Shown: piece by piece, positions 137 to 23,349 of the stretch
How the letters are laid out: each line of letters starts with the position of its first letter
Position numbering within the stretch: position 1 is the first letter of the stretch
Assembly: GCF_000315625.1 (NCBI RefSeq)
Contig: NW_005434402.1
Coordinates: 1-36,794 of the forward strand
Direction: 5' to 3'
DNA from: Guillardia theta CCMP2712
Taxonomy: Eukaryota; Protista; Cryptophyta
Length of the DNA stretch: 36,794 nucleotides
Program-made: the position numbers and the translations under genes
Notes under the pieces: model-generated
The model's input: only the letters and a program-made list of their open reading frames with translations
Databases searched by the model: none
Told to the model about the DNA's origin: nothing

Positions 137-2182
137 CGGGAGAAAAACGGGGAGGAGGAGGAGACTCTGTGTTGACCTGCACAGCAGCGGCAGCGATGAC
201 GAGAGGAGCGACGAACTTGGATCTCCACTGGTCGATTCGTTTCATGACGGCACAGACTCCCACACCTGGCCGACGTGAAATGAGATTGACTGGGAGAAAA
301 TGAGAGAAGAGGAGGAGGAGAAAGAAGAAACAGGAACTTGGCTGAGATGTCAAGTGAGTTATGACAAGAGGGGCGGAGGGAAGACAAGGTGGAGAGATGA
401 AGAGAGCAGAACAATCGAAATTTCAAGTCATCATAACACACAAGCATCACAAGTATCACACCTCATGACAAAGTAACAACATCTCAACAGCGTTGAGGGA
501 ACAAGAATCGTCACCGATGAAGACCGACACGACCAAGTTGGCTTGCATCCAAAACCTCTTAAGAACCCCGAGGTGCATCTGGCACAATCTTCAGTGCCCG
601 GCGGACTTACCAGCACTCACCTGGCTCTTGTCCGGGAGGTTTGAGAGGGAGCCGAAGACAAGGAGGTAGAAGGAGAGGAGGTACAACAGCTCCTTAGCAA
701 CAACATGCTCACACCTCGCAGCTGAATCTGTCTTGTCCTTGTCTCTCACGTTCTTCTTGCCACCTGCTGTCATCATTAACAGATGTTCCTCTTGCCCCTC
801 GTGTGACCTGTGAAGAGGTAGAAGAATCCGACGACTGCGAGCAAGACGCCAACGTAGTGCGTTTGTTGCAGGAGCTCCCAACCAAACTTGACGAGGAAGT
901 TTGTAAGGTTGGTTTGTACCTGCCCTTCATCTCATTTCCTCCCATCATCTTCCAGTCTCTTCAACCTGCTGATCATCACCAGAGTACAACCGAAAAGTTC
1001 CTGAGAGCAAGACATGTTATGAACGTGTTGCGAAGTTATGAGCGTGAAACAACATCACATCACCATATTCTGATCGAAGCACGTGTCTGATCAACCCTTC
1101 CATGCTATCTGTCGCTCCCCACGATCCTGCACTGATAGTCAGCCCTCAGAGCTTCCTCCACTTCTTCCTCTGCCACCGTCAACCTTCCCTGCCTCCTCTC
1201 CCTCCTCTCCCTCCATCCCCCACTCTTCTCGCCTCGTGTCTCTCCTCCCCTCCCACTTGCTCACCAAGAGGAGGGTGTGCTGCGGCGACCACTAGGTACG
1301 CATAGGGAAGCAAACCAACGAGTCCCCAGAAGCAGAGGGAGAGGAAGAGGCGAGGACGGAGTAAGAGGCCAGGCTCCTGCATACTGTTCTCAGGGAAGGG
1401 AATGCTGAAGGCGAGGATGCGTGGGGAGAGCAGAGCAAGAACGAGGATGAGGGGAGCAGGAGCAGGAGCAGGAGCAGGGGCAGGAGCAGGAGCAGGAGCA
1501 GGAGCAGAAGAGGGGAGTTGCCTTCTTGATGTTCATGGATACGATGGGAAGAGCATAGAACATGATGGTGTGCTGGTTGCTGAGACCAAGTCCGATGACC
1601 ATTGCTGCTGTCTGAGCATCTGATATGATCGCCGTCATGCTCTGTCCTCGATTTCCACACTCAATCATCAACTTCTTACCCTTGGGATCTTTTGTGAGAG
1701 CAAATCTATCAAGTCCGTCAAGCCATGAGAGAGGTTCAGTGGGAAACAGCACCTGAGGTGAAGGAAGAGCAGAACGGCGACAAACATGTTGTTCATCGCA
1801 AACACTTCAGCATGTGTTGCGTATGTCCAGACGAGAGGCGAAAAGGCAAAAGAGAAAGCGCTCCATGCTGAAACAAACCTTCGCCTCGCATCAACAAGGT
1901 GGGAGAAAACAAGAGCTCAGTACCTCGAACAATCGAGCTCGTCATCGCCATGCTTGCTTGCGCTTGACTGAACGATCTTAGTTCGCAGGAGGAGCTGAGC
2001 AGCACAAGTTTGTCAAGGGATTCAACAACATGTCATCGTTACGTTTGACACGCTGAAAAGAAACCAGCGGCGATCGAGGCTGACAGAGCTGACAGCAAGT
2101 TGACACGGAAGGCTGGCGACCCTGGGTCGCAAACATGAGAGTTGAACCCCTTCAATCCATCCCCTCTCCTCCTCAACATCAA

Positions 2183-2217
<35 letters not shown>

Positions 2218-2254
2218 ACATCAACATCAACATCATCATCATCATCAACATCAA

Positions 2255-2286
<32 letters not shown>

Positions 2287-3247
2287 ACACCATCCTCCAG
2301 CCCCTTCCCCTCCCTCCCCCTTCCCCTCCCTCCCCCTTCCCCTCCCTCCCCCTCTCCCTCTCTCTCCCTCTCCCTCATCATCAACTTCAAATCTTCTCCT
2401 AGTCATCTTCATCGAAGCTACCATAGGGGATGGCGCGTACGAAGATCGCTCCCAACTATCATGAAGAGATCAGCAAAGACTTAAGGCGCATAAGACCCTC
2501 ACAATGGTGTGCAGGGGGTAGCCAGGAGGGTGAGCAACTCCAAGATTGCAACAAGTAGCAACCTGCAAGGTCCTTTCATCCATCTTCATACCACCCATGA
2601 CGTCACTGTACCAAGTCCCCGCTATCACCTCCTCCCACCGTTCGATACATGGTGGACACATAGATGGCGAAACAAGCGCAGGTCACGGAGAGAGACCAGA
2701 TCAAGTCTGTTCTGTCCAGCCTGCTCATGGAGGTAGCAGGTAAGTTCCATGCTCGTCCTTCCGGGACCGTGAAAAGAAAAGGGATAACAAAGAAGGTGAT
2801 GATGATTGCTTTTACATGCGATGACACTTGTGAGGATGCGAAAATTTGTGAGCTCTCACACAGATTTTCTTTGTTCAAATTGTCTGATACTTTCAGCAGA
2901 TTCGGAAATGCAGCCCTCGATCTCTTTCCCTTTACCCACTTCCGATTCCAGTCTCTCTGCCCCTTCCCCTCCCTCTCCTGTTTGCTTCCCTGGTCTTGAT
3001 CTCTCTCTCTCATACACATACACTCCCACACACACCGTGTTTGCCATGATCCTCCTTCTCGTTCTCTCCCTCCCTCCTCCCTCCTCCCTCCTCCCTCCTC
3101 CCTCCTCCCTCCTCCCTCCTCCCTCCTCCCTCCTCCCTCCTCCCCTCCTCCCTCCTCCCTCCCCTTCTTCCCACTCTCCCATCTCCTCACCTCGCTCTTC
3201 CTCTTGCATCTTCTCCTGCATTCTCACCTGCTGCCCTGCCTCGCCAT
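1..3247 (-). CDS. TMEM260: TMEM260 / DUF2723 family GT-C protein O-mannosyltransferase-like membrane protein; multi-exon, 3' end beyond the left edge, start codon uncertain (3247 or 2728)
   Basis: Spliced exons give, in the family order: MYRTVGGGDSGDLV / VATCCNLGVAHPPGYPLHTI / GSPAFRVNLLSAL / FAFSPLVWTYATHAEVFAMNNMF / GLGLSNQHTIMFY / GLLPYAYL..AHPPLG / GSWGATDSMEGLIRHVLRSEYG/TFRL / VFGSLSNL / GVLKRFWMQANLVV. These match recalled TMEM260 motifs (GGDSGEL, LGVAHPPGYP, AEVFSLNN, CNQHT, HFLREEYGTF, ERFWMQ). Confidence 0.9.
2175..2290 (+). repeat. (CAT/CAA)n intronic microsatellite; similar tracts at about 29250-29510 and 33920-34200
   Basis: Directly visible trinucleotide repeats inside introns of the TMEM260-like, RAE1 and LRR genes. 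Confidence 0.9.
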
Positions 3248-3359
3248 GATCCGCAATCCTTCTTGATGGGAAACAAGCTCAAACTACTTAATTTAACCCA
3301 TAAGTCTCTTAAATTAACCAGAAACATGTTAACTGAACTTCCGAACTCAACTCGGAGGT

Positions 3360-3680
3360 CAACTCATCAGTCACTAGTCGGAGCCTCCGACGAGGCTCCG
3401 GGAGCCAGAGAGCCGGCCCATCGCGGGCCGTGGCATGCCACACTGAAGGCTACTAGCTTCAGTAGCGATGAGCCCGGACTCCAGACAAGTGGCCACCGGG
3501 CCCAGCCACCGGGCCCGGCACACTGCTCATCAGGCCGGCCAGGCCACCCCGGCTGACACGGAGCCTTTACGCAGTCACGGTCACCGCCGGGTGCGGGCGC
3601 GAAGTTTGGCACTGCTTGCAACGGAATTGAGTTGCCGCCCGGCCTCGTCGGAACACGGAACTCAGCGGTAGTAGAACCAT
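3360..3680. repeat. GC-rich, palindrome-dense intergenic island (copy 1)
   Basis: Dense CCGG/GGCC words (ccgggcccgg, ggccggccaggcc, ccaccgggccc twice); no credible coding exons; composition similar to 5920-6390 and 9030-9270. Confidence 0.45.
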
Positions 3681-3953
3681 GACGGATTTGAATTCTAAGC
3701 AACGAAAACACAGATACACGGTTATTTCATTCACGCGTTGACACAAATAGAGGTCAGTGCCGACCCAATATAGCAGGCCGCATGACAAAAATAAGATCTA
3801 CACAGAAGACTCATGATTCTAACACAGCAGAGACGAGGCCTCCACCAAGTTTATCATCATCCTTTCCTGTGGCATTGCTTTGAAATTTACCCATCTGAGC
3901 TTGAGAGCAAGAGAAAGCGCACAGACAAACCCCAACCAACGACCCTGACAAGT

Positions 3954-4636
3954 TTACAAGATGGTGCAGCCCCCTTTCTTCTTGGGTTCAGGCTTTGGCG
4001 GCTTCAGCGCGCACTTGATGGCCTCATCGAAAACTCTCTTCAAACCATGCTGAGTCAATGCAGAGCATTCCAGGTACTTCACCGCCTTGACCTTGTTCGC
4101 CATGGCTTTCCCCTGCTCCTCTGTGACTGGCCTCTGCTTCTCTTCTTCCAATTTCTTAATTATCTGGGGCTCGTTGCGCAAATCAATCTTGGTTCCAACT
4201 AGGATGATTGGAACACCCGGCGCATGATGTTGCAACTCCTTATACCACTTATGTTCCACGTTCTCTAGCGAAGTTGGATTGACGACAGAAAAGCAAACAA
4301 GGAACACGTCCGTCTGGGGGTAGCTGAGGGGTCTCAACCTGTCGTAGTCTTCTTGTCCTACAAGTATACATCTGTTAGCAAACAATCGGTCTTGAACACA
4401 AGGGATCAGACCTGCTGTATCCCATAATCCCAACGTCACAGGTTTTTCTTCAACCATTACATTTGCACTGTAATTATCGAAAACGGTGGGGATGTAATCC
4501 TGAGGAAAGGAGTTGGTTGTATCTGTTGATCTGTTAGAGTTCCTATGATAGGCACAAGTAAAAAATTACAGCTGATAAGCATGCACGTCTTTCCCACAGC
4601 ACCATCGCCAACAACAACGCACTTGATCGACCGCAT
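3954..4636 (-). CDS. RAC1: Rac/Rho-family small GTPase (exons 4636-4570, 4522-4412, 4357-3954)
   Basis: [78 protein letters not shown]...GTKIDLR...YLECSALTQ...KKKGGCTIL*. All G-boxes, a polybasic tail and a CaaL prenylation box are present. Introns are GT-AG, 47 and 54 nt. Confidence 0.96.
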
Positions 4637-5359
4637 CTGCTCAGTAGCTATTAGTAAGTAAACTTTTAGACAGAAAACGAGCTTTATCGCTCTGAAGGTG
4701 TAATTCAGAGCAGACATAAGACGGAGACCAAAACAATGAATATTCTATTGTGCAAAGAAAACATATTTGACAAGAAATTTCAGCACTTTCCGGTTCCTGT
4801 TCAAGCCAAATTCTGAAACTGATACCCTCTTCAGTGGAATGAGTATAAGTGTAGCATTCACAAAAAAGATTTCCATCTGCAACTTGAAAGTGCATCTACT
4901 CGACACAAGAAATCGTTGATAGCTCTAATCGTTTCTTATTTTCACTCTGGAGACTGAGTATTTGCTTCCTTCAAACAGCAGCCTTGTCTGCACTACTTTC
5001 GCAACTTCCAGTGAATGTGAGCAACATCCCTCTATAGACACTGTCCATTTTGATCAGAGTAGATTTCTTACTTCTACGCAGCTCTTCGTGTTTAATGCAT
5101 TTTCCACGCTCAACCAACCATTCCATCAAGTACGCTCTGAGCTGACCTCGCCGACTTCACAAGGTCCTTGAACCATCAACTCTTTCTGTATGTCTGAAGC
5201 GCTAGCTTCCAGTCTACGACTCAAGATAGATTGCCGATGGCGATCATAGGCGCCTCTGTCCTCTGGCCTCTGTTTCTCTCTCCCCTCCTCCTCCCTCTCT
5301 CTGACCCGCCATTGCTGCCTTCCACCGCAACAGCTCCTCGACGACCCTCCGCCTCGACC

Positions 5360-15740: not shown

Positions 15741-16783
15741 CCAGATAAAAAAAAGAAAAAAAAGAAAGTTAAAAAAAAGATCTCGGGATGGGGATAAAAA
15801 CATTCGATTTATATCATTGTAGATGTTAAAACACTTCTTTTCAGATCTCAGGCGTCAGATATTTTGGCAGTCGGTGAGAAGCGTTGCGTGTTTTCATTGT
15901 AGTAAGAAGAAGATTCTTGAGCCTCGAAGGGACGCAAGAACACCTTCAACTTGGGGGTGTACAGGGGGTTCTCAAAGGGGCGAAAGGGGTAGGGTACGTA
16001 CTGCAATGGCAGACTGATATTAGCTATATCAGACTGATATATTCGGAGGGAGCACCCTTGGATGGCAGGGTGGGGTCCTGGTGGTCGTTCGGTTGGGTAG
16101 GGGGGTGGTGCTTGACTCAAGGGTTTAACAGGCAAGAAGTCTGATTGTATCGAAAAGACTCGATTTTGAAAGGAGATGCGGATGGGTGGGAAACCAGGGG
16201 AACGTTTTGAGGATTGGGGGTGGGGTACTTTGAAAGGGTTGAATTTTACGAGACCTCGGATGGATATAATAGGGGGTACATGGAGAGGTAAATGCACTAT
16301 ATTACAGGGGTAGGGTCAAATAATCTTTTAGGTTTAGGTGGGGTGGGTCATCACGAGGGTGGGTGGTCGCTGGTAGTCATACTTGCTGGTAGTCTGCGTC
16401 GCTTCCCATGCTGGCCTTAAAGAGATACCAAGGTTTTCACTACCCCCCAATTTACTATACATAGGACCCCTACATGCCCAGTACTAGGTTGGTGTTGGTC
16501 CGGTCACGTCGTTGGCACGATACGAAAAAGTACCCCTACTTCGAAAGGCAAACATAGGGGTGTTGAAGAAGGTAAGGTCTCATATTAAGACCACCCCTCC
16601 GACCTTCAGATTCCCCCACGCCTGCCAAATCTCCTTCTCAATCCTCCTCGTCCCTTGTTGTTGCCTTCTTCTCTCTTCCTCCTCCTCCTCGTTCCTCCTC
16701 CTCCATCTCTCCTGTCTTCGTTCTCCCTGCTTCCTCTCTTTGTCCCGATCCTTGGTTTACCCCGGTTGCCCCCAAGGCGCTTC

Positions 16784-19700
16784 ATGGAATTGTCCCCCAT
16801 GCCGTCTACGTGCAGTTTCAGTCATGACTCACAAATGGAAAAGGAGCGGAGAGAGCAGCAGGTGTTTGAAAACCTTCAGGTCGAGGGCTATGCAGATGCC
16901 GAGTTCTTGGACAAGAGACCCTCTTGCGATAGTCGCATGGACGAGGGTCTACCTGAGCCTCTTCGCCCGTTGAGCCCTCCACACGAGTCTAGAAGCGAAG
17001 CTCCCCTGAACCAACAAGAGGATCATCAGCGCGTTCCTGCTTTCTTCCGGCAGAGCAGGCACTTCTCGCAGAGCTTCAAGCTGCCTTCACTCAAGCAGGC
17101 GACACAAGTTGACCAGAAATTCATGATTCGAGCGACTATGAACGATGTGCCGGGGCTGTTTCTGTTCGCCCTCTGGCTGATGGTCTATGTAGTCTTCGTG
17201 TATGCCCTGAGATCATACTCGTCCGCGTGTGCCAACGTGCAAACGGATGAGAGCGAGTACTACACCATGAAGAAGACAATGTTCGTCAAGATCCTGGCGG
17301 TGTTTCTTTTCAGCATTTGTATCCTCATGGATCTGTCTGGTATGCTGTTTCAGATCTCCGCCAAGAAGAGGACTCTCAACAGCCTCGTCCTCTTCATCAA
17401 CCTCGTTGCTTGCACGGTTTACCTGAGTTACGTCACGGGCGTGCTGCCGGTCCTCCACGACCTTGAGGGGCGGCAGATGTTCATCGAGCGCTACTTCCAA
17501 TGGATGAACACAACTCCCTGCATGCTGTTTGTCTTGCATGCTCTCGGGTCGTCCATGGAAAAGGAGCTCGTCATCTCCTTCTCGTCGCTCTTCCGCGTCC
17601 TGATATCCGATGAGTTGATGATCCTCACAGGTGGCATCTGACAGCTCGTGCTTCCATGATCAAGTCCTGACATGAACATGTCTTCCAGGGCTCGTTCATG
17701 CCGTCGTTGGTAACAGCATGATTGGTTGTGTCGCTTGCTTCCTGTCTTGCTGTTTCTTCCTCGACGTTCTCCGGGGTGTTCACGCCTTCACCAACTCAAG
17801 GTGTGACAAGAATGGACGTGCTGACTTCGTTGATGACATGCTCCGTCAGCGTTGCTAGAGCTGCGACAACGTACGAGATCGCGTCGTTGAGGTCGTTGGA
17901 GATCAGCACCTTCTTGCTGTGGTCCGTGTTCCCCGTCGTTCACCTGCTGCACTATGGAGGTGAGACTGGTACTGGTCACGTGGGACGTCTGACCTCTCAA
18001 CTCAAGGTTTCATCTCAACCTTCCAGTATGACATAGCGCAGACCTTCGTTGATATCCTCACCAAGTCGGTCTACACCGTCACGCTCCTCACCGGAAACTT
18101 CTGCATCCTCGACACTGTCGCCGAGGTCAGGATCGCCCAGCTGCAAGCTGAAAAAGAGACGAAGCATAAGAACGTGATCCGCACCGAGCTGATGAACCAG
18201 GCGCTGCAGGTGGGAGGGAGACAAGGAGGAGAAGGGGGCAGGGGGTTGATTGTGTGTGTACAGACGGCGATGCTAGAGGCGGAGACTTCATCTCGCCTGT
18301 CTCGTCATTTCCTTGCCAACATCAGCCACGAGCTTCGCACCCCCCTCAACTCGGTCGTCGCCTTCAACTCGCTCCTGCTGGAGTCGGAGGACCTGAGGTG
18401 AGCTTTATGCTGCCCTCTCGCGATGTGAGACCACAAACAGCGCCGCACACAAGGATTACGTTCGTTCCTCCTTGACGTCCGCGGACGCTCTGCTAACCGT
18501 CATCAATCAGGTCTTCCTCCTCCCTTGCTTTCTTCCTCCTCCCTTCCTCCTTTTTTCTACGCCCCTGCTGCTCCATCACCATCTCCTCCGATCCCTGCTC
18601 TTTCTTTCGTCCTGTTTCATCCCCCCCCCCCCCCTCCCCGTTCTAGTCCGTGTCTGCTCCTACTCCTCAAGTTTCCTGAAGGACCTGAGCAGGTGCTGGA
18701 CTACCCCAAGTTGGAAGCGAAGGAGGACAACGAGAAGGAGGGCAAGGGAGGAGAAGAGAAGGAGGGCAGCGAGCTCATGGAGGAGTTCTCCCTCCTCAAG
18801 CTTGGCGAGGATCTCTCCGACCTCATCGCCTCCTGCATCAAGTCAGACCTTGACTTCGCCGTCGACATCCAAGTCTCTGAGGCAGACGCGGAGCTCTTTC
18901 TCTATGGCGATGCCTTCCACATCCGTCAATGTGCCATGAACCTCTGCGACAATGGTGCTTCCTCCTGCTCCTCCTCCTCCTCCTCCTCCTCCTCCTCCTC
19001 CCCTCCCCCCCATCTCCTGTCGTTTCTCCTCGTCGTCTACCATCTGACTGACAGCTGTTCAGCCATGAAGTTTTCGCCGGAGCAGGGAGGAGAAGTGACT
19101 CTACGCATGAGGCTCTCAGACTTGGACGAGGCCTCGTCCGTGTGCCTGCTGCACGTCGAGGTGGAGGACAACGGCATCGGAATCCCAGAGGACAAGCTCA
19201 ACCTCCTCTTCAAACCTTTCTCTCAGGTCCCTGCTCCCTCCTCCTCCTCTGTCCTCCTTCTCCCTCACTCCCCCCTCTGTTTCTTCTCTTTCCTCATCAT
19301 CGTCTGTTCTTGCTTCCTCCTCCTCGTCCCTGCTGACCAGCCTGCAGGTTTCCTCGCAGTACACGCGACTGCATCAGGGGACGGGGCTGGGCCTCGCCAT
19401 CACCAAGAAGCTCGTCGACTCCATGCACGGCAGCATCTCCTGCCAGAGCAGAGGAGCAGAAGCCGCGAAGAGCAGAGGAGGAGCAGCGGCAGGAGGCACG
19501 GGAACAGTCTTCTGCATCACTGTTCCTCTTCACTTCACTCGTCAACCCGTAGGGGTCAACTCCACCCTAGAAATCCCAGGCCTGCAGGAGGGGACCGTCA
19601 TCCTGGCGACGAGGAAAGGACCGAGCTCAGCGCTCATCATGAGGCTGTGCAAAGAGAGGAAGGTGAGGGTGGTGGACCTGCGGCAGGACAAGGGGCCGGT

Positions 19701-21012
19701 CAGCAAGCAGCTGCTGGTGAAGCTGCAGGCGGCAGTGAAGGCTCAGGGGGATCGGCCGTTCTGTGTGGTGGTGGACATGCTGGTGTACGAGCAACTGAGC
19801 GCGATGGCGACGGAGCTGAGCTGCTTGAAGAGCTTCTTGATCTTGGGGGGGATGACGTCCCAGCTCTGCCTGCTCAAGAAGAAGCGACACGACGAAGCCT
19901 CCAACGTCATCCCCCTCCCCATCAAGCCGTCGGTGCTCTTCTCTAAGATCTTCTCCTCCTTCACGGTCGAGAGGAGGCGGTCGATGTCTTGCGCTTGTCT
20001 GACTGCCGCCAACAGGAGGAGAAGAAGTCTCCTGCCCTTCCCTCCTTTCCTTACGCTGCCAAGGTAGCCAAGGAGACGGTGAGCAGCGGGAACGTCCCGG
20101 CCCTGGAGGAGGCGGTGAAGAAGGAGGCGGAGGAGGTGAGAGGAGGAGACGCTGCGAGGCTTCAAAGGCTCATGGCCAAGCAGGATAATCGCATGCGCAT
20201 CCTCGTGGTGGAGGATCAAATCGCCAACCAGAAGGTCGCAGTAGCCCTCCTCCAGCGCGTCTTCGGTGAGCATGAGAGACTGAGGAGAAGGGAGGGAGGG
20301 AGGGAGGGAGGGAAGGAGGCCGCAGGAGGAGGAGGAGGAGGAGGAGGAGGAGGAGGTGGAGGAGGAGGAGGGTTGACTGGTGAGCAGGCAAGGATAAGGT
20401 TGCGGTTGACATCGCCAACAACGGAGAGGAAGGAGTCGCAGCCGCATCGTCTGGAAGCTACGACCTCATCCTCATGGACATTCAGATGCCCATCATGGAT
20501 GGACTTGAGGCCTCTCGCAAGATCCGCGAGTGGGAGAAGGAGGTATGCTGCTTCCGCCATTTCTCCCTCAACCCCCCCCCCCTCGCTGTGTCCTCCTCCT
20601 CCTCCTCCTCCTCCTCCTCCCCCTCCTCCTCTCCTCACGTCCATGGCAGAAGGATCGAAAGAAGATCTGCATCATAGCTGTCACTGCTCACACCAGCCCA
20701 GCGCATGTCGAGGAATGTATGCAAGCAGGTCTGCTATCTCCTGCCGCAGCTCTAATCCCTCCTCTCCTCTTCCTCTCTCCTCCCCCTTTGCCCTGTTCTA
20801 TCTTGCGATCTTCATACTGATGTTCATGCAGGCATGGATAGACATTTCTCGAAACCCCTCAGCCTTTCTCTCATGCGATCCATCGTAGAGGTAAACGTTG
20901 CTCCATCCATCCATCCTCCCTTTGATCATACCTCCCCCTCCCCTCCCCTTTCTCTCCCTCCCTCTCATTTTCTTTTCAGGACTTCGATGATTGGAAAGGA
21001 AGTCGCGTTTAA
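16784..21012 (+). CDS. Histidine kinase rhodopsin (HKR): 8-TM type-1 rhodopsin + HisKA + HATPase_c + pseudo-receiver + receiver
   Basis: Rhodopsin: helix [16 protein letters not shown] (R at 17489), helix [11 protein letters not shown], helix [12 protein letters not shown], helix [11 protein letters not shown] (DxxxK, Lys codon 18063-18065). Kinase: H-box [14 protein letters not shown] (His 18327), N-box [21 protein letters not shown]1 [18 protein letters not shown]2 [13 protein letters not shown]. Receiver: [29 protein letters not shown] (Asp 20477)..[15 protein letters not shown]. Stop TAA at 21010-21012. Confidence 0.93.
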
Positions 21013-21128: not shown

Positions 21129-23349
21129 TCATCCTCCTCCTCCTCCTCCTCCTCCTCCTCCTTGCTCTGTGCTAGTTGCCACTATCGCCTCTCGTAGCAG
21201 CACTTGAAACTCAGTTGCTCCTGGCATGGCGTCACAGTCCAACAGGCTCAGCGCTCTCTCACCTGTCCCTGTCGCTGTCGCCTGTAGGTAGGAGGAGGCG
21301 AAGCTGAGATGAACGCGACGGAAAGCTGCGAGGCAGGAGCTCATTCCGTATAAACCACCCCCCTCCCCTCCCCTCCCCTCCCCACCTTCCCTCCCCTCCC
21401 CTCACCCCTCAACACACATTTTTTCTGACGTCCTCTCCTCCCTAGATCCCTTCCTCTTTCCCTTTCCTCCTCCTCGTTCGCTTTTGTTCTCTTCCCACCT
21501 TGCAACGAACGCACGCAATCATTATAACGATCGCTGAGGTCCTGAGCGTGAGGGAGCAGGCGGGTCTTGGCTCGCTCAGCTGCCTGTCTGATCCCTCCAT
21601 GCACCTTCACCTCCTCCTCGAACTTCTTCATCTGCTGCCTCGTCACTCTCACGCTGCCACGTCCGCATGCTCACAAACTCTCGATGCTTGCGAGGGAGAT
21701 ACTCCTCCACCACCTCCCGCTAGTTGACAAGTCAGAGCCCCCACAGGGCGGAGAATGGAGGAGAGGAGGAGCAAGCGGTGCGGGAGCGAGAGAGGAGAGG
21801 GAGGGGAGGGGAGGAGCAGAGAGGGAAAGAGGAAGGAGCAAGGACCTGAAAATCGCTCATCAAGACCTCATGTCGCACACCGAGAAAGAGATCGATCATG
21901 ATGAAAACTGCACTCTATCGTCCCCGTTCAGCTTCTCCTCCTTCTCCCTCCCCTCCTCCTCCATACTTGCCCAGCACTTGGACCTTTCGCCCTTGACCAG
22001 ACTCCTTCATCATCTCCAGTCCCTTCCTCTCCTTCCTCGCTGGTCTTCAGGAGCACTCCGTCTGGCCAGAAGCTGCAGCGAGGGATGAGAGGAGCGCGGG
22101 GAAGGAGAGACGTGCCCTGTGAGGAGAGGGCGGTACACGTGGAAGAAGACGTCGGCATGCACGAGCTCGGAGAGCTACAAGAGGAGTCAGAGGAACCTCA
22201 ACTCGCCATCCTCCTCCACCTGCTTCATCATCGACTTGCAGTCCTGCAGCGCATCCCTCAAGTCTTCCAGCAGCTGCCCAGCTTCTCTCACAGCAACACC
22301 AGCCGCCTCCTCCCCTCCCTTGTCATCTTTGCTGATGTGCGACAGGATGAAGCATGGCGCGTAGAACATGGCGGCAACCAGCGGGCCCAGACGTGCTTGG
22401 ATGGCACAGGGGATGAGATGGAAAAAGCTCTCAGTGCTTGTGCCTGAATTGCTTCACGCTCACTCTCCTCCTCCTCCTCCTCCTCCCTTCACCTGTCATC
22501 GAGCTTATCGTTTCCAGCGCTTCCACGCTGCTCCTTCCCTGCTCGTTCCGCTTCAACCTGAGGAGCATCAGCGGGCGACGTGCGAGACAAGGGCATCATC
22601 ACTTCCAGTTCCAGAGGTCAATCGCAGCGGTGAGAACAGGCGGCAACCCGAGTCTGCCATGCCGTCACACCAGCATGAGGACCATCGCTACACTTGGTGC
22701 TGACGTCGACGAGAGGTGTCGAGATTTGAGCAGGAACGGAAGGATGCCGCACATAGTTAGCGTCCTGAGCCGCATGGGACGACTCTTCACTCTCATGCTC
22801 TCTCAGCCGCTCCCATGATACTGTACTGCTATGAGCAAACAACTTCACCTCCTCACACGCAACCTGTCGGTCCGTTTACGTATGAGTGTAGCAGCATGCA
22901 CAGGACGATGTATGCTCGCTTCAACTGCGCTTCTTCTAGGTCTACTCTGGATCAGAGGATTCAGTCGACTCACAACCGCACCATCAACATCGATGCATCG
23001 CAAGCGCTCGATCGACCGGAACAACTGGGGGGGGTGAGTCCGCGGGGCAGATGGAAGACAACAAGAGCAAATGTCACACCTGTCCTGTTCGGTTGAGGTG
23101 TGGCAGGTCATCTAGGATTCGTTCCCATGGCTCGTATGCTAGCGGCAGGCTGTCACAAGGTCAGCCATGGCTGTCGTAGGCATGAGAATACCGTTGGACA
23201 CAATGGTCAGGCAAGAATCCACCCTCGAGAGAAACATCAAACTTTCGGGCAGCCTTCTCCTCCTCCCAGGCTTCGACGACTCTCTGCCGGTAGCCATGGC
23301 TCCTCTCCTTGCTCCTGCAGCCCTTCAGCCATGGGCCACCCACCGCCAT
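21129..23349 (-). CDS. Indoleamine 2,3-dioxygenase (IDO) family heme enzyme, divergent; multi-exon
   Basis: Spliced exons: KFDVSLEGGFLP / LPLAYEPWERILDDLPHLNRTGQ / LKRAYIVLCMLLHSYVNG / RLGLPPVLTAAIDLWNW / ESFFHLIPCAIQ / VHADVFFHVYRPLLTG / GPSAGQS..IDLFLGVRH / EYLPRKHREF / RYNDCVRSL / LAAFRRVHLSFASSYL..GTG/ATEFQVLL. These are collinear with IDO motifs (GFLP, LPPIL, FFxxxR, GGSAGQS, YMPPAH, proximal His in RSYH, GTGG). Confidence 0.9.

What the first reader, a model, noticed from the sequence alone, without database searches (positions are those of the whole stretch)
16784..21012. Light-gated hybrid histidine kinase: rhodopsin-HisKA-HATPase-pseudoREC-REC with no cyclase output
Seen: splicing joins a type-1 rhodopsin with its retinal Lys (DILTK) through a helical linker to an intact H-box, N/G1/F/G2 boxes and a canonical receiver (ED..D..T..KP), then a stop. 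The ORF track hides helices E and G, so the gene is easily mis-annotated as a plain histidine kinase. Known: the characterised HKRs come from green algae (Chlamydomonas/Volvox HKR1 and 2c-Cyclops, which carry a cyclase-type domain, and Ostreococcus HKR). Inference: this is a cryptophyte-type photoreceptor phosphorelay that signals through a separate partner such as an HPt or response regulator. It is the best candidate for an undescribed system here and a possible optogenetic two-component tool.
Basis: partly seen in the sequence, partly recalled or inferred. Interest (0 to 1): 0.9.

Follow-up and report, generated by a model that had tools for sequence, protein, structure and literature searches.

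The report
Known Guillardia histidine-kinase rhodopsin gene
This is a real, expressed, 15-exon gene of the cryptophyte alga Guillardia theta that fuses a retinal-type light sensor to a histidine kinase and receiver, but it is already annotated (GUITHDRAFT_122016) and was listed as a putative histidine-kinase rhodopsin in two papers from 2020, so only its biochemistry remains unknown.

Summary
Window 16784-21012 (+) holds a 15-exon gene whose introns are all GT-AG. It encodes 1015 aa: an N-terminal tail, an 8-helix type-1 rhodopsin (retinal Lys376 in DILTK, Gln239 at the bacteriorhodopsin D85 site), a helical linker, HisKA (His446), HATPase_c, a degenerate receiver fold, a canonical receiver (Asp938), then a stop. 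There is no cyclase. Spliced transcript contigs from two runs support every intron and corrected one of my splice calls.

The novelty claim fails. The genome is Guillardia theta CCMP2712. The gene is GUITHDRAFT_122016 (XP_005818773.1), and that RefSeq protein equals my model from Met18 onward, helices E and G included. All four published Gt_122016 primers (Konno 2020, "putative HKR", expression measured) match the window exactly. Awasthi 2020 lists the protein as GtRh5, a HisK-RR modular rhodopsin, with Q222 and K359 tabulated (8 of 8 residues match).

Rhodopsins with kinase and receiver but no cyclase are that catalogue's largest group, and Gln at position 85 is common among them. I found no photochemical or kinase data for any cryptophyte member.

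The likely mechanism is a light-regulated His-Asp phosphorelay through a separate HPt protein; this is inferred. An HPt-like exon exists elsewhere in the genome.

Verdict: already known, real, uncharacterised, modest interest.

The parts
16784..21012 (+). Whole coding region, 15 exons, 1015 aa, stop TAA 21010-21012. This is GUITHDRAFT_122016 / Gt_122016 / GtRh5.
   Evidence: Model. Spliced contigs. Identical to XP_005818773.1 from Met18.
16784..17630 (+). Exon 1: N-terminal tail (aa 1-122) plus TM0 to TM4 start. The RefSeq start is the ATG at 16835 (Met18).
   Evidence: Transcript contig covers 16708-17627. No ATG occurs in 16600-16783. Published forward primer sits at 16835-16853.
17689..17800 (+). 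Exon 2 (end of TM4, and TM5)
   Evidence: Joints 17627->17686 and 17798->17848, GT..AG
17850..17959 (+). Exon 3 (TM6, with the W-x-x-F-P motif)
   Evidence: Joints
18007..18209 (+). Exon 4: TM7 with Asp372 and the Schiff-base Lys376 (DILTK), plus the first part of the helical linker
18264..18397 (+). Exon 5: linker end and H-box (His446, codon 18327-18329)
   Evidence: Pfam HisKA. The rhodopsin contig runs into this exon to about 18354, and the kinase contig starts at about 18347.
18441..18510 (+). Exon 6: DHp helix 2, first part
   Evidence: Joints 18395->18439 and 18507->18690
18693..18954 (+). Exon 7: end of DHp and start of HATPase_c (N-box NLCDNA spans the exon 7/8 junction)
19063..19226 (+). 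Exon 8: HATPase_c with G1 box DNGIG and F box
19348..19965 (+). Exon 9: G2 box GTGLGL, end of HATPase_c, and most of the degenerate receiver fold
   Evidence: Joint 19223->19345
20016..20135 (+). Exon 10: spacer between the pseudo-receiver and the receiver. I missed it in my first model.
   Evidence: Joints 19964->20015 and 20133->20182
20184..20265 (+). Exon 11: receiver beta1 with E890-D891
20388..20542 (+). Exon 12: receiver with phospho-acceptor Asp938 (codon 20477-20479)
   Evidence: Pfam Response_reg 5e-11
20650..20728 (+). Exon 13: receiver Thr971
20832..20890 (+). Exon 14: receiver Lys993 (SKP)
20980..21012 (+). Exon 15: last 10 codons plus TAA
   Evidence: Joint 20888->20978, also seen in 2 raw RNA reads of X17. 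Published reverse primer sits at 20994-21009.
17150..18095 (+). Rhodopsin domain, TM0-TM7 (aa 123-386, introns included in this span)
   Evidence: Pfam 5e-20. AF2 model shows 8 helices. Foldseek matches Rh-PDE 7cj3/7d7q and bacteriorhodopsin, with TM-score by target up to 0.85-0.86.
17498..17500 (+). Codon of Gln239, at the bacteriorhodopsin D85 counterion site (motif [10 protein letters not shown])
   Evidence: Tabulated as Q222 of GtRh5 in PMC7693036.
19546..20051 (+). Degenerate receiver (pseudo-REC), aa 701-852. It has no acidic pair after beta1. Asp776 sits at the end of beta3, and a KP motif follows beta5.
   Evidence: No Pfam hit. AF2 pLDDT 81, (beta-alpha)5. Foldseek top hits are REC domains, E 7e-4 to 1e-2. 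Conserved in cyclase-less relatives.
18705..18705 (+). Assembly base C reads G in RNA contigs (X1, X2) and in DNA contigs (X12). This changes codon CCC (Pro497) to GCC (Ala).
   Evidence: table 3. Homologues have Ala, Thr or Ser at this DHp position.

Best explanation
This is the Guillardia theta histidine-kinase rhodopsin GUITHDRAFT_122016 (Gt_122016, GtRh5), an enzymerhodopsin of the cyclase-less HKR kind. Shown here: one expressed 15-exon gene encodes an 8-helix type-1 rhodopsin with the Schiff-base lysine (K376) and Asp372, but Gln239 at the D85 site and Val250 at the D96 site, so it is not a proton pump. After it come two predicted linker helices, a DHp domain with His446, a complete CA domain, a receiver-like fold lacking the metal-binding acidic pair, and a canonical receiver with Asp938. 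Inferred: retinal isomerisation moves TM7, and the helical linker passes this to the DHp dimer. That changes autophosphorylation of His446. The phosphoryl group then goes to Asp938 in the same protein and on to a separate HPt protein and response regulators, as in eukaryotic multistep phosphorelays. The sign of regulation is unknown; by analogy with Cr2c-Cyclop1 it may be light inhibition. The pseudo-receiver probably acts as an internal regulatory or dimerisation module, as in other hybrid kinases with that layout.
For: Gene structure and transcript. Identity with XP_005818773.1 / EKX31793.1 on a 36794-base contig. Genome size of 87.1 Mb in 669 contigs. Exact matches of all four published Gt_122016 primers. 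Match to GtRh5, 8 of 8 tabulated residues. Domains. Key residues. Rhodopsin fold with TM0: the sequence match to Rh-PDE 7d7q starts at TM0, the AF2 model has 8 TM helices plus linker and DHp helices, and Foldseek's best matches are Rh-PDE, then bacteriorhodopsin. Pseudo-receiver. Possible partners in the same genome: an HPt-like exon with HAHSIKGASATIG, Pfam Hpt 25.1 bits against a cut-off of 24.6, and receiver domains outside the HKR loci. Mechanistic analogy: Cr2c-Cyclop1 needs ATP, the conserved His and phosphotransfer to its receiver, and is light-inhibited (PMC8006352).
Against: No experiment on this protein or any cryptophyte HKR was found. Retinal binding, absorption, kinase activity and light dependence are all untested. 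No single contig spans rhodopsin and full kinase: the two transcript contigs meet inside exon 5 with only about 8 bases of overlap, at an H-box stretch where summed contig depth triples and loose ends run into unlike sequence; I read this as k-mers shared with paralogues. The linker has low AF2 confidence (pLDDT 51-64) and is broken into two helices in the monomer model. The HPt candidate is one exon just above threshold, and nothing links it to this kinase. For the related Cop5, the authors raise that the kinase may be non-functional (PMC8006352).
Confidence: 0.8

Rival explanations
1. The protein is photoactive, but the C-terminal receiver is not a relay station. It serves as an internal phosphate sink or autoregulator, or it acts directly by protein-protein contact, so no HPt or response regulator lies downstream.
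For: Only one weak HPt-like exon was found in 87 Mb. The protein carries a second, degenerate receiver that suggests intramolecular control, as in hybrid kinases such as ShkA, whose Rec1 is among the fold matches.
Against: The receiver has the full D/D/T/K set typical of phosphorylatable receivers. Six-frame searches of an intron-rich genome miss short HPt domains, so few hits mean little (one search says absence is not shown).
Confidence: 0.12
2. The rhodopsin domain is not a light sensor here. It senses something else or only anchors the kinase, and the kinase is light-independent.
For: The primary counterion is Gln. The green-algal relative COP5/HKR1 has been linked to ammonium chemotaxis (PMC11621555, title and abstract). 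Gt_122016 expression tends to fall on nitrogen depletion (PMC7714340).
Against: Lys376, Asp372, Trp240, Thr243-Thr244-Pro245 and the W-x-x-F-P motif of helix F are conserved across the family. Gln at position 85 occurs in Cop6 (Q170), which is light-regulated (PMC7693036; PMC8006352). G. theta also has rhodopsin-like genes that lost the Lys (Rh-noK), and this gene is not one of them.
Confidence: 0.06
3. The fusion is an annotation artefact, and the rhodopsin and the kinase are separate transcripts or genes.
For: No single Logan contig spans the whole mRNA. The contigs break inside exon 5.
Against: The rhodopsin contig already contains the spliced linker and the H-box up to about 18354. The kinase contig starts at about 18347 in the same uninterrupted exon. 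At least ten relatives of about 900-1050 aa from other organisms have the same fusion. Konno et al. designed full-length RT-PCR primers at both ends and then quantified the gene as expressed.
Confidence: 0.02

Closest known systems
Gt_122016 / GtRh5 / GUITHDRAFT_122016 (Konno et al. 2020, PMC7714340; Awasthi et al. 2020, PMC7693036)
   Same: It is the same gene. The RefSeq protein equals my model from Met18, the four primers match exactly, and 8 of 8 tabulated residues match.
   Different: Transcript data suggest a start 17 codons upstream, at 16784, and Ala instead of Pro at residue 497 (480 in RefSeq numbering). Neither paper reports photochemistry or kinase activity.
Ot-HKR of Ostreococcus tauri and other cyclase-less Rh-HisK-RR rhodopsins ('noncanonical HKRs', PMC13739731)
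   Same: Same kind of protein: rhodopsin, HisKA, HATPase_c and receiver, with Asp212 and Lys216 kept. Awasthi 2020 places OtRh1 in HisK-RR and not in the cyclase list.
   Different: OtRh1 has Glu at the D85 site (E181) where this protein has Gln. A marine-metagenome clade that I suspect is Mamiellales, but could not name, is only 27-28% identical in the rhodopsin part and is a weakly supported sister (86/81) to the cryptophyte clade.
Chlamydomonas/Volvox HKR1 (Cop5) and 2c-Cyclop (Cop6/Vop6)
   Same: An 8-TM opsin plus DHp/CA kinase plus receiver. Cop6 also has Gln at the D85 site (Q170). This is the mechanistic template for His-to-Asp signalling.
   Different: Those proteins carry a guanylyl-cyclase domain (plus SAM and others), and this one stops after the receiver. 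They fall in a separate, strongly supported clade. The chlorophyte cyclase HKRs that I aligned lack the pseudo-receiver.
Rhodopsin phosphodiesterase of Salpingoeca rosetta (PDB 7cj3, 7d7q)
   Same: It is the closest solved rhodopsin by sequence (E 2e-9, aligned from TM0) and by fold (E 6e-9, TM-score by target 0.71-0.85). Both are 8-TM enzymerhodopsins with a helical linker.
   Different: The output domain differs: phosphodiesterase against histidine kinase. Identity is 18-19%.
Hybrid histidine kinases with a pseudo-receiver before the true receiver (for example ShkA of Caulobacter, PDB 6qrj/6qrl)
   Same: The layout is DHp-CA, degenerate receiver, then receiver. ShkA is among the best sequence matches to the receiver, and its Rec1 is among the fold matches of the pseudo-receiver.
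   Different: The sensor is different, and there is no evidence of c-di-GMP control here. The structural match is only at fold level (TM about 0.5-0.6, 12% identity).

Membership tests
Histidine kinase rhodopsin (HKR) | Type-1 (microbial) rhodopsin domain with the Schiff-base lysine in helix 7 | tested here: met
   Pfam Bac_rhodopsin 5e-20 over profile positions 7-219 of 224. Lys376 in DILTK is invariant in a 20-sequence alignment. Fold match to bacteriorhodopsin has TM-score by target 0.85 and rmsd 2.2 A.
Histidine kinase rhodopsin (HKR) | Extra N-terminal helix (TM0), giving 8 TM helices and cytosolic ends, as reported for the enzymerhodopsins identified up to 2021 (PMC8006352) | tested here: met
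   The AF2 model has 8 helices before the linker. Sequence and fold alignments to Rh-PDE start at its TM0. This is prediction only.
Histidine kinase rhodopsin (HKR) | HisKA/DHp with the phospho-accepting His, fused in the same polypeptide | tested here: met
   Pfam HisKA 6.9e-15. SHELRTP with His446. The spliced contig joins TM7, the linker and the H-box.
Histidine kinase rhodopsin (HKR) | Catalytic HATPase_c domain with N, G1, F and G2 boxes | tested here: met
   Pfam 6.2e-25. NLCDNA, DNGIG, FKPF and GTGLGL are present.
Histidine kinase rhodopsin (HKR) | C-terminal receiver with the acidic pair, phospho-Asp, Thr/Ser and Lys | tested here: met
   Pfam Response_reg 1e-21. E890-D891, D938, T971 and K993 are present.
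Histidine kinase rhodopsin (HKR) | Retinal binding and photochemistry | not testable with these tools
   No published data were found for any cryptophyte HKR.
Histidine kinase rhodopsin (HKR) | Light-dependent change in kinase or phosphotransfer activity | not testable with these tools
   Konno 2020 states that kinase activity of HKRs had not been revealed. Only 2c-Cyclop has indirect evidence, through its cyclase read-out.
Two-component cyclase opsin (2c-Cyclop) | Guanylyl/adenylyl cyclase domain after the receiver | tested here: not met
   There is no Guanylate_cyc on the protein or anywhere on contig C272, while 81 matches lie elsewhere. The transcript ends about 70 nt after the stop by my calculation from contig lengths.
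Light-driven proton pump (bacteriorhodopsin-like) | Asp at the proton acceptor (D85) and proton donor (D96) positions | tested here: not met
   Gln239 and Val250 occupy these positions.

The most novel reading that the evidence does not exclude
The cyclase-less HKRs of cryptophytes and their marine relatives form a functionally distinct, uncharacterised subfamily. Two features mark it: a conserved pseudo-receiver between kinase and receiver, and a Gln-85/Asp-212 retinal pocket. In Guillardia they may work as a 'split' two-component cyclase system, with light-controlled phosphate passing through the lone HPt-like protein to a separate kinase-receiver-cyclase or receiver-cyclase protein such as the one on contig C25.
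Probability: 0.12. Interest if true: 0.6.

Novelty: already known. Interest (0 to 1): 0.25.

Why it matters
In the literature I could search, no HKR has had its kinase activity shown to be light-controlled by direct assay, and the cryptophyte clade has no spectroscopy at all. A cyclase-less member with an intact kinase and receiver is a reasonable candidate for a light-controlled two-component tool, and for learning how Guillardia uses its many rhodopsins. This report adds a transcript-checked gene model, two probable corrections to the public protein (start codon, Pro497Ala), fold-level support for the pseudo-receiver, and a candidate HPt partner. It does not uncover a new system.

Tried and rejected
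1. My first gene model had 14 exons and a single intron at 19966-20063. Transcript contigs showed two introns and an extra exon instead.

2. Raw RNA reads of run X17 gave only 39 reads, almost all at the 3' end. They confirm only the last intron.

3. The Pfam Hpt search of the genome at the default threshold found nothing. Relaxing it gave one exon at 24.1 bits, and 25.1 bits when the ORF was scored alone.

4. Pfam does not detect the pseudo-receiver, even at E=1. Only the predicted fold supports it, and the Foldseek E-values are marginal.

5. I tried to name the marine clade (P0036) through homologue searches, but none of its members carries a name. Its assignment to Mamiellales / Ot-HKR is therefore only an inference from Kabbara 2018.

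6. I briefly thought that four of six Guillardia HKR loci were unrecognised, because Konno's dataset holds only Gt_122016 and Gt_107802. I dropped that idea when Awasthi 2020 turned out to list GtRh4-10.

7. 'Gln at D85 is unusual' is rejected within this family: 17 of 47 modular rhodopsins have Gln there.

8. The original HKR1 paper (PMC3501036) is not held.

Full report
**1. What is in the sequence**

The window is eukaryotic, with short GT-AG introns.
- Pfam finds them in order on the separate exon ORFs: Bac_rhodopsin (4.9e-9), HisKA (1.2e-8), two halves of HATPase_c (5.9e-9 and 1.5e-6) and Response_reg (5e-11).

**2. Transcript evidence**

- The look-up of sequencing runs returned runs of two coded organism labels.
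- Contigs of X1 and X2 lack the introns, so they derive from spliced RNA. Contigs of X12 keep the introns, so they are genomic DNA.
- Twelve GT..AG joints are listed. The junction 18954/19063 follows from adjacent record coordinates. The junction 20542/20650 follows from my arithmetic: the 243 contig bases left after 20540 fit only the spliced form.
- The reads corrected my model. Between 19965 and 20265 there are two introns (19966-20015 and 20136-20183) around an exon at 20016-20135. The final model has 15 exons and 1015 aa.
- One contig carries exon 1 through the spliced linker into the H-box (16708 to about 18354). A second runs from about 18347 to about 70 nt past the stop.
- The two contigs meet inside exon 5, where summed depth rises from about 116 to 330-380 and loose ends diverge. 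I read this as k-mers shared with paralogous H-boxes.
- So a single transcript is very likely, but no single contig shows it.

**3. Identity of the gene**

- The assembly has 87.1 Mb in 669 contigs.
- A whole-library HMMER search with helices TM0 to TM4 found only 70 relatives.
- The top cluster contains EKX31793.1 / XP_005818773.1, 'hypothetical protein GUITHDRAFT_122016 [Guillardia theta CCMP2712]', UniRef L1I6C2 'Histidine kinase', 998 aa, on a contig of 36794 bases.
- That protein is identical to my model from Met18 onward. The public annotation therefore already joins all helices correctly.
- Konno et al. 2020 (PMC7714340) list primers for Gt_122016 / XM_005818716.1. All four match the window exactly once: at 16835-16853, 20994-21009, 17088-17108 and 17162-17181.
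- That paper calls Gt_122016 a putative HKR. It says two of three 'clade C' rhodopsins carry a kinase domain, and it reports that expression tends to fall under nitrogen depletion.
- Awasthi et al. 2020 (PMC7693036) tabulate 'GtRh5 Q222 T226 T227 V233 D355 G339 Y347 K359' in the HisK-RR class. All eight residues match XP_005818773.1. GtRh4 likewise matches GUITHDRAFT_107802.
But the gene, its architecture and even its Gln are already in print.

**4. Anatomy**

Residue numbers follow my model; subtract 17 for RefSeq numbering.
- *Pfam on the full protein* (converted to model numbering): Bac_rhodopsin 176-385, HisKA 438-501, HATPase_c 564-695, Response_reg 886-1004, and no cyclase.
- *Helix C* reads [10 protein letters not shown]. 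Against bacteriorhodopsin numbering (from established knowledge of that sequence), R82 is Arg236, D85 is Gln239, T89 is Thr243 and D96 is Val250.
- *Helix G* reads FVDILTK, so D212 is Asp372 and K216 is Lys376. The protein is of the sensory type, not a pump.
- *Closest solved rhodopsin*: the 8-TM rhodopsin phosphodiesterase, by sequence (7d7q, E 2e-9, aligned from TM0) and by fold.
- *AF2 model of aa 117-517* with 20 homologues: mean pLDDT 80. It shows eight TM helices, then a linker helix and the two long DHp helices. Linker confidence is low at 51-64, so 'helical linker' is supported only as secondary structure.
- *Kinase boxes* (H, N, G1, F, G2) and the *receiver residues* E890-D891, D938, T971 and K993 are intact.

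**5. The pseudo-receiver**

- Residues 701-852 give no Pfam hit.
- The region aligns across the cyclase-less relatives.
- It folds with pLDDT 81 into a beta1-alpha1 to beta5-alpha5 pattern.
- Its best PDB matches are almost all receiver domains (StyR, PleD, PhyR, CheY, Spo0F, ShkA Rec1), at modest scores: E 7e-4 to 1e-2, TM-score by target about 0.4-0.7.
- It lacks the acidic pair after beta1 (VILATRKGP) but keeps an Asp at the end of beta3 and a KP after beta5.
- The chlorophyte cyclase-bearing relatives that I aligned lack this module. I found no paper that mentions it, but I cannot claim it is undescribed.

**6. Relatives**

- Long relatives share rhodopsin and HisKA. Most also carry HATPase_c and a receiver, without a cyclase. 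The Myrmecia protein scanned by Pfam (P0049) and, by precomputed Pfam, further Myrmecia, Trebouxia, Dunaliella and Volvox proteins add Guanylate_cyc, and most also add SAM.
- A maximum-likelihood tree of the rhodopsin-to-DHp region places this gene in a 100/99 clade. Its members are Guillardia paralogues, a Hanusia-like sequence, MMETSP transcripts and marine metagenome proteins.
- That clade is weakly sister (86/81) to another marine clade. It is apart from the chlorophyte cyclase HKRs plus a Goniomonas sequence.
- The tree is midpoint-rooted, and several long branches were flagged.
- Gln at the D85 site occurs in all Guillardia paralogues and in the cyclase HKRs. Glu occurs in other clades. 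Awasthi 2020 counts 17 Gln among 47 modular rhodopsins.

**7. Paralogues and partners**

- Five further loci encode rhodopsin-kinase genes: C31 (which is GUITHDRAFT_107802), C1, C99 and two on C84. Receiver exons were matched at four of them; the fifth is cut by the start of its contig.
- The C1 locus is represented in RefSeq only by a 141-aa fragment, while an MMETSP transcript gives 995 aa.
- Awasthi's list of GtRh4-10 already covers a family of this size.
- None of the loci has a cyclase domain nearby.
- One HPt-like exon exists at C259:19413-19532 (-), with the motif HAHSIKGASATIG and an Hpt score of 25.1 bits against a cut-off of 24.6.
- Receiver domains outside the HKR loci exist on C29, C78, C154, C49 and C25.
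- On C25, HisKA, two receiver pieces and a strong Guanylate_cyc (3.9e-60) lie in a row on one strand. This is a two-component cyclase without a detectable rhodopsin.
- Nothing links any of these to the gene in hand.

**8. Mechanism and verdict**

- The best reading is a light-regulated hybrid histidine kinase that feeds a multistep phosphorelay.
- The domain set, key residues, expression and fold are shown here.
- Retinal binding, the sign of light regulation and the partners are inferred. The inference rests on Cr2c-Cyclop1, which needs ATP and phosphotransfer and is light-inhibited, and on general two-component knowledge.
- The held literature has no work on a cryptophyte HKR.
- The finding is accurate and the gene is a sensible target for biochemistry, but it is already known as a predicted HKR. 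It belongs to the commonest architectural class of modular rhodopsins, so I score novelty as 'already known' and interest as low to moderate.

Noticed in passing
window 18705: The assembly reads C, but two RNA-derived contig sets (X1, X2) and the DNA contigs (X12) all read G. This turns Pro497 (RefSeq P480) in DHp helix 2 into Ala, the residue most homologues have there. It is probably an assembly error or a strain difference carried into XP_005818773.1.
   Followed up: yes
window 16784-16837: The transcript extends to at least 16708, and there is no ATG anywhere in 16600-16783, so the first AUG is 16784, 17 codons upstream of the RefSeq start at 16835. A 97% identical fragment from another sample (P0001) has Leu at the RefSeq start position and begins at the equivalent of Met6.
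   Followed up: partly
G000:C25:716500-723500 (L013): HisKA, two Response_reg pieces and a strong Guanylate_cyc domain (3.9e-60) lie in order on the + strand. This is a two-component cyclase gene with no detectable rhodopsin, so receiver-to-cyclase coupling exists in Guillardia outside the HKRs.
   Followed up: partly
G000:C259:19413-19532 (-), L012:1426-1686 (-): This is the only HPt-like match in the genome by six-frame search. One exon carries HAHSIKGASATIG and scores Pfam Hpt 25.1 bits against a cut-off of 24.6. It is a candidate phosphotransfer partner for the hybrid kinases.
   Followed up: partly
G000:C31:~71400-75100, C1:~990200-993700, C99:~2000-5200, C84:~200-1700, C84:~198600-202300: Five paralogous rhodopsin-histidine-kinase loci, all with Gln at the D85 site. 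Four of them have lost the Arg82 equivalent (helix C reads FAQW, YVQW or FMQW). The C1 locus is annotated in RefSeq only as a 141-aa fragment (GUITHDRAFT_149795), although a 995-aa transcript exists. Konno's 42-rhodopsin dataset contains only two of the six.
   Followed up: partly
P0073 (cluster of P0005): A 939-aa member of this eukaryote-type HKR clade is deposited as 'MAG: ATP-binding protein, partial [Promethearchaeia archaeon]' (MGB1591753.1). It may be eukaryotic contamination of an archaeal bin.
   Followed up: no
window 21220-21261 and beyond: Transcript contigs show a CT..AC joint, which is an intron of a minus-strand gene, directly downstream of the HKR stop. Depth there is higher than over the HKR. 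The two genes converge within about 200 bases.
   Followed up: no
window 3957-4457 (-): An exon encodes a Ras-family small GTPase (Pfam Ras 8e-31). The other long ORFs of the window gave no Pfam match.
   Followed up: no
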